Shown: positions 11,715-18,165 of the stretch, piece after piece
Numbering within the stretch: position 1 is the stretch's first letter
Layout of the letters: the number at the start of each line of letters is the position of its first letter
Source: Podarcis muralis
Lineage: Eukaryota
Assembly (NCBI RefSeq): GCF_964188315.1
Contig: NC_135672.1
Span: 12,958,001 to 13,022,000, forward strand
Reading direction: 5' to 3'
DNA length: 64,000 nt
Program-made: the position numbers and the translations under genes
The notes under the pieces: generated by a model
Seen by the model: only the letters and a program-made list of their open reading frames with translations
Databases searched by the model: none
Told to the model about the DNA's origin: nothing

Positions 11715-14700
11715 TCACTTCGCTGGACAGCTTTTGCTCCTCCTCCTCCTGACGCTCTTCCGTTTCTCGATGATGAAGTCGATCTGATAGATGAGCAGCA
11801 CGGCGAGAAAGAAGACGACCGCCTGGAACGAGGAAAGGAGGACAGGCGCGCTTGTGACTGCATTTAAGGACCTCAGGAGAATCTTGTAGCGGCCATTGCA
11901 GCTGGATCAGGCCCCTTGGGGCCCGTATAAGTCCTGCCCCCTGTCCTCGCAAAGGGAAGAAGCCCACAAGCGGGACCTGAGAGAAACAGCACCCCCCTCT
12001 GCTCTTGTTCTCCACTGTTCTAAGGTAGACTGGCTCTACGCGTGGAGGCTCCACTTCGGAATCGTAAAAGGAGCCACACGGCGGCAGCTGGATTAGGCCA
12101 AAGGGGGCCCATATAAGCCCAGCCAACCGGTTGCCCACAAGGGGAAGCCCCCAAGCAGGACTTATGGGTTTATCCTTGCAGAAGCCACGCTGGTTCTTGT
12201 TCCAGCAGGGCTTGTCCTTCTCTAGACGTGGTCATTTACCTTCAACAACCTGGATAGGCCTGTAATTTCCTGGATACTTCCCCTCCCTTTTTTCAACTGC
12301 CTTTGCGCCAGCCTCCTCCTTCTCTATTAAATACAGCCCTTGACTTATCCTCGCAGAAGCCACGCTGTTTCTTGCTCCAGCAGGGCTTGTCCTTCTCTAG
12401 ACTTCTGCCTTCGACAACCTGGATAGGCCTGTGATTTACTGGATACCTCCCCACCTACCTTTTAAACTGCCTTTGCGCAGGGCCCTCCTTCTTGATTTGA
12501 AATACAGACTTATCCTTGCAGAAGCCATGCTGGTTCTTGCACCAGCAGGGCTTGTCCTTCTCTAGACTTGGCCATTCTGCCTTCCACATCCTGCAGAGGC
12601 CTGTAATTTCCTGGATTCCTCCCTTTTTAAAACCGCCTCTTTCTTCTCCTTGAATGCTTTCGCTGGAAGGGAGGCACGTTGGCCTGCAGCCCTGATTTTG
12701 GGAAGAGGGACAAGATTGGAGCCCCCCCTCCCCCGGCAGCCCCCTTGCTCACCTCCAGGACCAGCAGCCCAAAGGCCAGCCCGGCCACCAAGAAGAGGTT
12801 GCTGCGGCCCCAGCGGACCGTCTTCTCCAAACACCCCTCGGTGTACACCAAAAATTCGGCCTTCCATGGCTTCAGTTTCTGCGTCCCGTAGCCGCACATC
12901 GTGTTCAGAATGGCCTGCAATTAGCGGGCGAGAGAACAGGGTGGCCCATTAGGAAGGCCCCTTTGCGACAGCCCAAAGACACCGCCTTCCGTTTGCCCTC
13001 CGGGATACTGTTGGCGATTGGAGGTAGACTGCCTTGGGACAAGGAGGCTCTACTCCCAATAAGATGATCTGGGGAGCCCCAAAGCAGCCAAACCAAAGGG
13101 GCCCCGTCTCGTCCAGCAGCAGACACGAAAGCCGACGGCCTCCAACTCTTTGCCAGTGTTCGGGGCAGGTTGCCTCCGAATCCGTGCCTTGGGTGTCCTT
13201 GCGGGCTTCCCAGAAGAAGCTTCCGGCTGGCCAATGTGGGGACAGCTGGACCAGGTGGGCTCTGGCTGCAGCGCTCTTCTGGGGCATATGTGCATGTAGG
13301 GAGTGCCTAGCTACACACACACTGGATCGGGGCAAGGCCTCCCCAAGCCAGCTGGGAGTAAAGGCTCCCAAAGCCAATTAAGAGTGAGGGCTTCCCAACT
13401 GTCCAAAAGAAACTAAATGTGGAAAAAATGGGGTACCTATAGAGATTTGCTATCTTTTGAAAAGGATGGAACAGTATTAAGTTTACTAAAAATCAGCAAG
13501 GTTTCCTTCAAGCCAGCTGGGAGTAAGGGCTCCCGAAGCCAATTAAGAGCGAGGGCTTCCCAACTGTCCAAAAGAAATTAAATATGGAAAAAATGGGGCA
13601 GCTATAGAGATTTGTTATCTTTTGAAAAGGATGGTATTAAGTTAAAATAAATCAGCAAGGCCTCCCCAAGCCAGCTGGGAGTAAGGGCTCCCGAAGCCAG
13701 TTATGAGTGAGGGACTCCAATGCCAGTTAAGAGTAAGGGCTTAAGGTTAGGTTTCTACCAGTCAATGTCTGGTTCCGCTTGAGCATGCCCTGTCGGGCTG
13801 CCTCCTCACCTCTTTGCCTCGCACGCAGCAAGAGAACGGGACAGCGCAACGCTCCAGGCTGGGGTTCGAATCCCGGCAGTCGAAGTAAACGTTCTGGGAC
13901 CAGTCTTTGTAGGAGTGGACCCCGCAGCACTCAAACTGGGGAGAGAAATAAACAGGAGCGAAGGGCGTTGAAGAACAGAAGGCTTTCCCCCCGGATTATT
14001 TAAAGGGTATGACGAACGCTTGAGCGGGATTTGAACTCGGAGCAACAGGACGACTCTCTTGTTCGGACACTGGCGGGCGAAGGGACCGGCTCAGTCCACC
14101 AGGGGGCGAAACAGCCGCCCTGCCCCGGGGCACCGGCAACCCACGCTATGCCCCTGCGAGAAAAGGAAACTTCGGCGTCTCTCAACTTTTTACCTTTTTT
14201 TGGATATAGTCGATGAGGTTTTGCAGGTCCAGGTTGTCGCGGTAACGGGAGATGGCTCGTCCCATCAGCAGGGTGGCTTTCTCCATCACCTGGGACACGG
14301 TGGAGGGAGGGGAGAGGAGAGAAAGAGAGTACAGGAGCAGTGAGAAATCTCCCCTGCGCCCGTCAAGAGTGCATCTCCAGCCGACAGCGAAAAGTTTGGA
14401 GAATATGGCGGATTTAATAAGCTCCCCCCCTTTGCAGCAAACCGAACGGACTTCCGGAATGGGTTAAATTAAGGTTACCGGATTTTTTCCAATGGATCCG
14501 GGGACACTTTTCAACTCCAATGGATTTTGTAGGGGGGCTGATTTGTATATCCGGGGACTGTCCCCGGGAAACAGGGACGTCTGGTAACCTTAATTTGAGA
14601 ACCAAGGTACCACTGTACTGGTGAAATCAAATAAAAATAATTTTAAAAGAGAAAAAGAGTGAATCTGTATGCCCAAAAAGCCGCTCTAATTCTCACGGGG

Positions 14701-17700: not shown

Positions 17701-18165
17701 ATCCTGGAGATTGAATTTTCTGTGGGTCACGAAACCCCGGCGCCAAGCAGGGTGCCCCTGCCCCACTCACCCCCTTCCTTTGAAAGCCTGGCGTAGATCC
17801 CGACGGCTACCATCAGCCCACCGGCCACCTGGAGAGGGCAGAAGAACAAGCCGTTCGTGGCATCCTGCTTTTGCAAAAAGGGCGCCACACACTCATGCCC
17901 TGTCGCTTGCGGTGGGCAGGGCAGGTCGGGGATGTGCCAAAGGAGAGGAGCCGGCCCCGAACTCCCCGTGGCCCCGAGGGAGGCCTTGGCAAAGGCAGCC
18001 CAGCCTCTGAGAGCTAGAGAAAGCAGCCTCTGGGTGAACTCCTAAGCCCTCGGAGGCCCGCTGCCAACACAGGAGCCGGCGCCAGGCGTGCCAAGGCTCT
18101 CGACTCACCCAGAAGAGGTAGCAGGAGGCAAACAAGGTGTACTTGATTACTTGGTTGGTGCGCAT
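11715..18165 (-). CDS. Tetraspanin of the TspanC8 subfamily (TSPAN33-like paralogue), 8 exons, 268 aa, intact
   Basis: Exons (minus): 18165-18109, 17828-17771, 17044-16920, 15713-15639, 14289-14194, 13935-13810, 12914-12753, 11822-11715. All are GT-AG and in phase. Four TM segments. The large loop has ISRYRDNLDLQNLIDYIQKKFECCG, DWSQNVYFDC, ERCAVPFSCC, NTMCG and TEGC, giving 8 Cys. Confidence 0.93.
12172..12660. repeat. About 170-bp tandem triplication in tetraspanin intron 7
   Basis: GCAGAAGCCA(C/T)GCTG...CAGCAGGGCTTGTCCTTCTCTAGAC...GGCCTGT(A/G)ATTT recurs at about 12177, 12353 and 12518. Confidence 0.88.
13331..13740. repeat. About 165-bp tandem duplication (about 2.5 copies) in tetraspanin intron 6
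   Basis: CAAGCCAGCTGGGAGTAA(A)GGCTCCC...AAGAG recurs at about 13343, 13509 and 13667. Confidence 0.88.
14470..14592. mobile_element. Short MITE with TAAGGTTACC(G/A)GA inverted ends
   Basis: TAAGGTTACCGGA...TCTGGTAACCTTA; no TSD found. Confidence 0.6.
14860..15180 (+). mobile_element. Non-LTR retrotransposon ORF2 C-terminal fragment with a CCHC-type knuckle
   Basis: Translation ...CPCGDGSTETAAHVLLSC...; clade not determined. Confidence 0.6.
15237..15455. mobile_element. Tc1/mariner (Tigger-like) MITE
   Basis: TACAGTGGTACCTC...GAGGTACTACTGTA with TA ends. Confidence 0.85.
16028..16840 (-). mobile_element. Putative solo LTR (TG...CA on the minus strand) interrupted by a Sauria SINE
   Basis: Minus strand TGTGAGC...AATAAAG...CCGTTAACA, with a second copy at 2089. 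No clear TSD, so the far boundary is uncertain. Confidence 0.5.
16212..16563. mobile_element. Sauria SINE
   Basis: AAGGTAAAGGGACCCCTGACCATTAGGTCCAGTCGTGGCCGACTCTGGGG...CACCACCCGCGTCCC with 13-bp TSD AATCCCCATGTTA (16199-16211 and 16564-16576). Confidence 0.92.
17520..17712 (+). mobile_element. L1-type reverse transcriptase fragment
   Basis: ...KKAALMLADAEKAFDNVSW matches the RT motif xDxEKAFDxVxW. Confidence 0.8.

What the first reader, a model, noticed from the sequence alone, without database searches (positions are those of the whole stretch)
11715..18165. Intact, unnamed TspanC8 tetraspanin inserted between TMEM38A and NWD1
Seen in sequence: eight phase-consistent GT-AG exons build a 268-aa, 4-TM protein with exactly 8 Cys in the large loop, so it is not a pseudogene. 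Established: 8-Cys tetraspanins (TSPAN5/10/14/15/17/33) bind ADAM10 and control its trafficking and substrate choice. From recall, TMEM38A directly neighbours NWD1 in human, and TSPAN33 lies in a different neighbourhood (near SMO). Inference: this is a distinct TSPAN33-like paralogue kept in squamates and lost in mammals, potentially a further ADAM10 regulator. It may correspond to a fish-named tetraspanin, which I cannot check.
Basis: partly seen in the sequence, partly recalled or inferred. Interest (0 to 1): 0.8.

Follow-up and report, generated by a model that had tools for sequence, protein, structure and literature searches.

The report
Known TSPAN33-like tetraspanin gene, intact
This lizard gene is a real, expressed, well-conserved eight-cysteine tetraspanin, but it belongs to the old "TSPAN33-like" sister lineage of TSPAN33 that was described in 2010 and is kept from sharks to marsupials, so it is an ordinary, already annotated gene whose function has never been tested.

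Summary
Eight GT-AG exons on the minus strand (18165 to 11715) splice to a 268-aa, four-helix tetraspanin with eight Cys in the large loop. The N gap lies in intron 4. RNA contigs join exon 4 to exon 5 directly across it, and lizard, turtle and echidna orthologues have the same exon sizes.

The gene is a paralogue distinct from TSPAN33, with two gnathostome-wide clades (support 100/99 and 95/96), and lacertids also carry true TSPAN33. It is not unnamed, not inserted and not squamate-specific:
- RefSeq calls it "tetraspanin-33-like".
- Huang et al. 2010 already named the TSPAN33-like lineage.
- The order TMEM38A, this gene, NWD1 is also found in Zootoca and a turtle, and echidna has the gene directly upstream of NWD1.
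- Orthologues occur in cartilaginous and ray-finned fishes, coelacanth, lungfish, amphibians, turtles, a crocodilian, a monotreme and marsupials.
- Only birds and eutherians are missing from the protein searches.

It is under purifying selection (dN/dS 0.13 against Zootoca). A model of the 95%-identical Zootoca orthologue best matches TSPAN15 from the ADAM10 complex. An ADAM10-partner role is inferred, not shown.

The parts
18109..18165 (-). Exon 1 (57 nt), ATG at 18165-18163, N-terminus and start of TM1
   Evidence: gene model. E1-E2 splice 18109|17828 seen in RNA contigs of X1 and X3. Same 57-nt exon in Zootoca, Emys and echidna.
18166..18281 (-). 5' UTR, at least 116 nt contiguous with exon 1
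   Evidence: X3 contig record 11 runs 18106-18281 joined to exon 2. The true start site is not mapped.
17771..17828 (-). Exon 2 (58 nt), ends in phase 1
   Evidence: Acceptor junction seen in RNA; donor use inferred from frame and from the 58-nt exon in orthologues. The same contigs run on into intron 2 (17624-17770), so an unspliced form is also present.
16920..17044 (-). Exon 3 (125 nt), small loop and TM2
   Evidence: Pfam Tetraspanin positions 43-77. E3-E4 splice 16920|15713 in RNA contigs.
15639..15713 (-). Exon 4 (75 nt), TM3; donor GTAAGGA runs into the N gap
   Evidence: Pfam positions 79-101. RNA joint 15639|14289.
15485..15631 (.). Assembly gap, inside intron 4, next to an interspersed repeat (about 15230-15484)
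   Evidence: RNA contigs skip it, and 75-nt and 96-nt exons are adjacent in three other species. Very high RNA word depth at 15100-15499 marks a repeat.
14194..14289 (-). Exon 5 (96 nt), first helices of the large extracellular loop
   Evidence: RNA joints on both sides.
13810..13935 (-). Exon 6 (126 nt), CCG motif and Cys 1-6 of the loop
   Evidence: Pfam positions 141-168. RNA joints on both sides.
12753..12914 (-). Exon 7 (162 nt), Cys 7-8 and most of TM4
   Evidence: Matches TSPAN15 and TSPAN10 in the PDB sequence search. Used as query. RNA contigs cover it.
11715..11822 (-). Exon 8 (105 nt coding plus TGA), end of TM4 and basic C-terminal tail
   Evidence: Gapless alignment to the Zootoca C-terminus. 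The E7-E8 junction lies outside the stretch that was laid. About 325 contig letters precede E7 in X1 record 1, enough for E8 plus roughly 217 nt of 3' UTR (inference).
21397..28950 (-). Upstream neighbour TMEM38A (TRIC-A), same strand
   Evidence: Pfam TRIC on ORF pieces 24486-24683, 23531-23878 and 21984-22256. Last exon matches the Emys TMEM38A last exon at 21424-21627. The upper boundary is approximate (first exon read by eye).
5363..6619 (-). Downstream neighbour NWD1: its NACHT exon, same strand
   Evidence: Pfam NACHT/AAA_16. In Zootoca, Emys and echidna the gene downstream of the tetraspanin carries PF25469 WHD_NWD1.

Best explanation
This is the lacertid orthologue of the vertebrate 'TSPAN33-like' gene, the old sister paralogue of TSPAN33 within the eight-cysteine (TspanC8) tetraspanins. 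Shown here: it is intact, spliced as predicted, transcribed, under purifying selection, and in the same place (TMEM38A, this gene, NWD1) as in another lizard and a turtle, and next to NWD1 in echidna. The lineage dates to before the split of cartilaginous and bony vertebrates and is widely retained. It is missing only from bird and eutherian proteomes in the searches. Inferred, not shown: like the six mammalian TspanC8s, the protein probably binds ADAM10 through its large extracellular loop, helps it leave the ER and steers it to particular membrane compartments and substrates. If so, it would act as a seventh 'scissor' partner in non-eutherian, non-avian vertebrates.
For: Gene model and 8-Cys pattern. 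Pfam Tetraspanin hits on exon pieces in colinear order. 94.8% gapless identity to Zootoca 'tetraspanin-33 isoform X1' and 97.8% to Podarcis muralis 'tetraspanin-33-like'. Trees of 68 and 77 sequences give a TSPAN33-like clade (100/99) and a TSPAN33 clade (99/98, then 95/96), each containing chondrichthyans, ray-finned fishes and tetrapods, with many species in both. Published naming of the lineage: PMC2965184. Synteny: Zootoca and Emys TRIC-TSPAN-NWD1, echidna TSPAN-NWD1, Xenopus next to a MYO9-type gene, fugu next to UPF0449/REEP/SLC1A/ZIP genes. Identical exon sizes in four species. dN/dS 0.13 against Zootoca (dS 0.19), and 0.05-0.13 in the other pairs, most of which have saturated dS. 77% mean column identity across tetrapods. 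Spliced RNA contigs in two runs, and partial hits in further runs from five studies. For the ADAM10 inference: an AlphaFold model of the 95%-identical Zootoca protein (pLDDT 81) best matches TSPAN15 in the ADAM10-Tspan15 complex 8ESV_B (E 3.7e-15), then the TSPAN15 and TSPAN10 loops (TM 0.71). All tested human TspanC8s bind ADAM10 (PMC3483123, PMC5473022, abstracts).
Against: No experiment on any TSPAN33-like protein was found, so ADAM10 binding is extrapolated from paralogues at about 45-50% (TSPAN33) and 32% (TSPAN15) identity. The lineage evolves about 3.5 times faster than TSPAN33 (mean root-to-tip 0.99 against 0.28), which leaves room for a changed partner. Two large groups lost it, so it is dispensable in some body plans. 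The tissue of expression is unknown because the runs are coded. The raw-read run X23 showed almost no coverage. The E2-E3 junction was not directly seen. Absence in birds and eutherians rests on annotated proteins, not on genome searches.
Confidence: 0.85

Rival explanations
1. It is a conserved, expressed TSPAN33-like tetraspanin whose partner or role has diverged from ADAM10 control, for example by organising another membrane protein.
For: Long stem (about 1.0) and roughly 3.5-fold faster evolution than TSPAN33. No N-glycosylation sequon in the lizard protein. No functional literature. TspanC8s bind ADAM10 through different loop regions (title and abstract of PMC4751363), so binding is not guaranteed by fold alone.
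Against: It keeps the full 8-Cys signature and the nearly invariant loop core. The best fold match is the ADAM10-bound TSPAN15. Human TspanC8s and the fly members share ADAM10/Kuzbanian regulation (PMC3483123).
Confidence: 0.25
2. It is a squamate-specific or recent duplicate of TSPAN33 inserted between TMEM38A and NWD1.
For: Human TMEM38A and NWD1 are adjacent without it (recalled, not tested here).
Against: Orthologues sit at the same place in a turtle and in echidna. The clade includes sharks, chimaera, ray-finned fishes, coelacanth, lungfish and amphibians. Eight introns are conserved.
Confidence: 0.02
3. It is simply the 1:1 orthologue of TSPAN33, as RefSeq names it in Zootoca, Gavialis and most fishes.
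For: RefSeq names such as 'tetraspanin-33 isoform X1 [Zootoca vivipara]'.
Against: Only about 45% identity to Lacerta agilis TSPAN33, taken from the Zootoca row of alignment A2. There are separate, strongly supported clades. More than a dozen species have one gene in each clade, for example Sceloporus, Pogona, Salvator, Pelodiscus, Gracilinanus, Callorhinchus and Thunnus.
Confidence: 0.02
4. It is a pseudogene or assembly artefact whose open frame is an accident of the gap.
For: An N gap sits 7 nt from an exon.
Against: RNA contigs are spliced across the gap. Exon sizes are conserved. dN/dS is 0.13. The alignment to Zootoca is full-length and gapless.
Confidence: 0.01

Closest known systems
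TSPAN33-like lineage of Huang et al. 2010 (BMC Evol Biol 10:306); RefSeq 'tetraspanin-33-like'
   Same: Same gene lineage. The window protein nests with Zootoca and Podarcis inside this clade. It has the same eight-exon structure and the same neighbours as the turtle, Zootoca and echidna genes.
   Different: Nothing of kind. This is the copy in one more lacertid genome. The 2010 paper reported no synteny shared with TSPAN33 and gave no function. This report adds the TMEM38A-NWD1 position, presence in cartilaginous fishes, monotreme and marsupials, and RNA and selection evidence.
TSPAN33 (Penumbra), TspanC8 partner of ADAM10
   Same: Sister paralogue with the same 8-Cys loop pattern and four-helix layout. 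About 45-50% identity over the full length.
   Different: Separate gnathostome-wide clade, a different genomic neighbourhood and a much faster evolutionary rate. ADAM10 binding is shown for TSPAN33 in mammals but untested for this protein.
TSPAN15 in the ADAM10-Tspan15 complex (PDB 8ESV)
   Same: Best structural match of the model (E 3.7e-15, 249 aligned columns, 32% identity). The loop matches TSPAN15 and TSPAN10 loop crystals at TM 0.71.
   Different: Different TspanC8 branch. Contact residues with ADAM10 were not compared. Whole-chain TM is only 0.56-0.58, likely reflecting open or closed loop orientation and the moderate confidence of the model's variable loop region (pLDDT 58-71 at residues 151-190).

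Membership tests
Tetraspanin superfamily (Pfam PF00335) | Four transmembrane helices with a small and a large extracellular loop | tested here: met
   Hydropathy blocks at 10-32, 39-78 overlapping 68-108, and 217-253. Model helices 5-36, 48-72, 75-119 and 207-263. Exon pieces hit PF00335 in colinear order: 43-77, 79-101, 141-168, 164-211. Each piece is below the gathering score because it is short, but full-length orthologues carry PF00335.
Tetraspanin superfamily (Pfam PF00335) | CCG motif and conserved loop cysteines | tested here: met
   CCG at residues 140-142, PFSCC at 170-174 and GC at 206-207. These are invariant in the 44-sequence alignment.
TspanC8 subfamily | Eight cysteines in the large loop, pattern CCG-[DN][WY]-C-C-PxxCC-C-GC | tested here: met
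   A regular-expression match over residues 140-207 with exactly eight loop Cys. The pattern is as given in PMC2965184.
TspanC8 subfamily | Fold closest to solved TspanC8 structures | tested here: met
   Top PDB hits are TSPAN15 (8ESV_B, 7RDB, 7RD5) and the TSPAN10 loop (9HV7). The sequence search with exon 7 also finds TSPAN15 and TSPAN10 first. The model is of the 95%-identical Zootoca orthologue, not of the window protein itself.
TspanC8 subfamily | Direct binding to ADAM10 and promotion of its ER exit or maturation | not testable with these tools
   Needs co-IP and maturation assays. No paper on this lineage was found.
TSPAN33-like lineage | Groups in a clade separate from TSPAN33, with both genes present in the same species | tested here: met
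   Clade of 44 tips at 100/99 against the TSPAN33 clade of 29 tips at 95/96. Both genes occur in Sceloporus, Pogona, Salvator, Pelodiscus, Gracilinanus, Callorhinchus and several teleosts.
TSPAN33-like lineage | Position between TMEM38A and NWD1 in amniotes | tested here: met
   Window. Zootoca. Emys. Echidna, NWD1 side only.
TSPAN33 proper (1:1 orthologue) | Nests within the TSPAN33 clade, with no second TSPAN33 in the lineage | tested here: not met
   It falls outside the TSPAN33 clade. Lacerta agilis P0315 and Podarcis raffonei P0379 are the lacertid TSPAN33. This genome's own TSPAN33 could not be looked up.

The most novel reading that the evidence does not exclude
Its independent loss in birds and eutherians would then mark a rewiring of ADAM10 substrate control. 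Marsupials, monotremes, Xenopus and fishes would offer models for a 'scissor' that mouse and human work cannot see.
Probability: 0.3. Interest if true: 0.45.

Novelty: already known. Interest (0 to 1): 0.2.

Why it matters
It matters little for this genome, because the gene is a routine member of a lineage annotated in well over a hundred species and named in 2010. There is a modest wider point. The ADAM10 field speaks of six TspanC8 partners because it works in eutherians, yet most vertebrates, including marsupials and monotremes, carry a seventh that is conserved, expressed and unstudied. The clean TMEM38A-NWD1 position also gives a defined interval in which to look for relics of the loss in eutherians and birds.

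Tried and rejected
- **No reference for the spliced protein.** It could not be given to the database tools. I searched with exon 7 alone, which returned mostly fragments, then used full-length hits (P0004, P0069, alignment A1) as proxies.
- **Failed outgroup.** 'Tetraspanin-10 isoform X2 [Festucalex]' (P0068) was tried as an outgroup. It fell inside the teleost TSPAN33-like clade on a 2.9-long branch, so it is misnamed or chimeric, and I dropped it. No TSPAN5, 14, 17, 15 or 10 outgroups were available. The root rests on two arthropod sequences, and lamprey placement is unresolved.
- **Synteny look-ups that failed.** Wallaby and basking shark returned no DNA and no neighbours. Polypterus is not on record.
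- **ARAGORN.** It found no tRNA-like gene in the intronic repeats.
- **Raw-read run X23.** It gave almost no coverage of the exons. Tissue of expression could not be read from the coded runs.
- **dN/dS limits.** dS is saturated for lizard against turtle or echidna. The unsaturated pairs are window-Zootoca (dS 0.19) and, near the limit, Emys-echidna (dS 0.95).
- **Not attempted.** I did not search eutherian or avian genomes for relics, because no tool holds them.
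Full report
**What is in the sequence**

Reading 11500-18400 and enumerating every AG/GT combination around the eight coding blocks gives one 268-aa model on the minus strand. The exons are E1 18165-18109, E2 17828-17771, E3 17044-16920, E4 15713-15639, E5 14289-14194, E6 13935-13810, E7 12914-12753 and E8 11822-11715. All introns are GT-AG, and only the E2/E3 junction splits a codon.

Hydropathy gives three hydrophobic blocks before the large loop, two of them overlapping, and one after it. 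The structure model resolves four long helices. The loop between TM3 and TM4 holds exactly eight Cys, matching CCG-[DN][WY]-C-C-PxxCC-C-GC. Exon translations hit Pfam Tetraspanin in colinear order. Exon 7 alone finds TSPAN15 and TSPAN10 first among solved structures.

**The assembly gap**

The N run 15485-15631 starts 7 nt below the E4 donor (GTAAGGA|N), so it lies in intron 4. Three lines of evidence show that no coding sequence is hidden in it:
- The protein aligns without a gap over 268/268 residues, at 94.8% identity, to the 268-aa RefSeq protein of Zootoca vivipara.
- Splicing the Zootoca, Emys and echidna genes from their own DNA gives the same exon sizes, 57, 58, 125, 75, 96, then 126 or 141, then 162, and a last exon of variable length. 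The 75-nt and 96-nt exons are adjacent in all of them.
- RNA-derived contigs of about 870 nt in two runs join 12914|13810, 13935|14194, 14289|15639 and 15713|16920, and other contigs join 17828|18109. All joints have CT..AC ends, which is GT..AG on the minus strand.

**Transcription and constraint**

Fourteen RNA-type runs from five studies hold 5-17% of the words of 11715-15484, about what exons plus UTR would give. The laid contigs show the spliced form and a 5' UTR reaching at least 18281. Those contigs differ from the window at a few percent of letters, so they come from another individual or a close relative.

Two junctions were not seen directly. E2-E3 was not among the listed pieces, and the contigs that carry E1-E2 run on into intron 2. 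E7-E8 lay outside the 6-kb stretch.

dN/dS against Zootoca is 0.13 at dS 0.19. Eight tetrapod orthologues share 77% mean column identity. The gene is functional, not a pseudogene.

**What it is**

A search with exon 7 and then with full-length hits shows two sets of proteins:
- One set is named "tetraspanin-33-like" by RefSeq, or in some species just "tetraspanin-33". It includes squamates, turtles, Gavialis, the echidna, five marsupials, many frogs, a caecilian, salamanders, lungfish, coelacanth, Polypterus, sturgeon, gar, teleosts, sharks, rays and chimaera.
- The other set is TSPAN33 proper, including Lacerta agilis and Podarcis raffonei.

Maximum-likelihood trees of 68 and 77 sequences separate a TSPAN33-like clade (100/99) from a TSPAN33 clade (99/98, then 95/96). 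Each clade spans cartilaginous fishes to tetrapods, and many species have one gene in each. The window protein sits with Zootoca and Podarcis muralis, so the window is lacertid. The TSPAN33-like clade evolves about 3.5 times faster than TSPAN33. Lamprey placement and the root are not resolved.

**Already described**

Huang et al. 2010 (PMC2965184) list "TSPAN33-like" as one of 38 bony-vertebrate tetraspanin lineages. They treat it as the ohnologue of TSPAN33, note no shared synteny, and state that human lost six of the 38 lineages and chicken about twelve. I found no functional paper under tspan33a, tspan33b, TSPAN33-like or tetraspanin-33-like.

**Surroundings**

In the window, the NWD1 NACHT exon (5363-6619), this gene, and TMEM38A (TRIC exons between about 21.4 and 28.95 kb) all lie on the minus strand. 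MED26 (45424-47160) and an SLC35E1-like gene (51277-52188) lie beyond on the plus strand.

| Species | Arrangement |
|---|---|
| Zootoca | TRIC, tetraspanin, NWD1, same strand |
| Emys | TRIC, tetraspanin, NWD1, same strand |
| Echidna | Tetraspanin directly upstream of NWD1 |
| Xenopus laevis | Next to a MYO9-type gene |
| Fugu | Among UPF0449, REEP-type, SLC1A-type and ZIP genes |

From recall, the human counterparts of the Xenopus and fugu neighbours lie on 19p13. The gene is therefore an old resident of this block, not an insertion. The human TMEM38A-NWD1 adjacency, also recalled and not tested, would reflect a deletion.

**Distribution and loss**

A profile of eight tetrapod orthologues searched against 5.8 billion proteins listed no bird and no eutherian among the top 120 hits. 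The echidna, five marsupials and a crocodilian scored near the top. Loss in eutherians and in birds is therefore likely, but it rests on annotated proteins only. Two marsupial entries are flagged "LOW QUALITY PROTEIN" by RefSeq. "Lost in mammals" is too broad.

**How it probably works**

- Shown: family features, fold, constraint and expression.
- Inferred: an ADAM10-partner role. A model of the Zootoca orthologue (pLDDT 81) best matches human TSPAN15 from the ADAM10-Tspan15 complex, and then the TSPAN15 and TSPAN10 loops. All six human TspanC8s and the fly members regulate ADAM10/Kuzbanian trafficking (PMC3483123, PMC5473022). The most likely mechanism is therefore binding of ADAM10 through the large loop, promotion of its ER exit, and targeting to particular substrates. 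I put this at roughly 0.65-0.7.
- Main rival: a diverged partner, given the fast rate and the two independent losses.

**Verdict**

The thing is already known as a lineage and already annotated. Interest is low. The only wider point is that a seventh, unstudied TspanC8 exists in most vertebrates outside birds and eutherians.

Noticed in passing
window 15100-15499, 16100-16699, 17100-17299: Intronic stretches with RNA word depths of 10^4-10^5 in all runs, and many loose ends at 15454 and 16210. These are interspersed repeats, probably SINE-like. One of them abuts the assembly gap and probably caused it. ARAGORN finds no tRNA-like gene there.
   Followed up: partly
window 12170-12631 and 13332-13713: Two unrelated 165-bp tandem arrays, 2.7 and 2.4 copies at 78% and 87% matches, in introns 7 and 6 of the tetraspanin gene.
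   Followed up: no
window 11000-11323: A 38-bp minisatellite, 8.5 copies at 90% matches, between the tetraspanin 3' end and the NWD1 5' end.
   Followed up: no
window 17624-17825 with 18106-18281: RNA contigs in X1 and X3 splice E1 to E2 but then continue unspliced into intron 2. This is either pre-mRNA or an intron-retaining isoform.
   Followed up: no
window 45424-47160 (+) and 51277-52188 (+): Most of MED26 lies in one 579-aa open frame with Med26, Med26_M and Med26_C domains. The first exon of an SLC35E1-like triose-phosphate-transporter gene follows. The order matches the human 19p13.11 block as I recall it.
   Followed up: partly
P0068 (Festucalex cinctus 'tetraspanin-10 isoform X2'): This RefSeq protein falls inside the teleost TSPAN33-like clade on a very long branch (2.9) with odd composition. 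It is likely a misnamed or chimeric model.
   Followed up: no
same genome, another piece (note s1-180232): The scan holds a similar first-reader note on a TSPAN4-like tetraspanin 'missing in human'. Huang et al. [quoted passage not shown]
   Followed up: no
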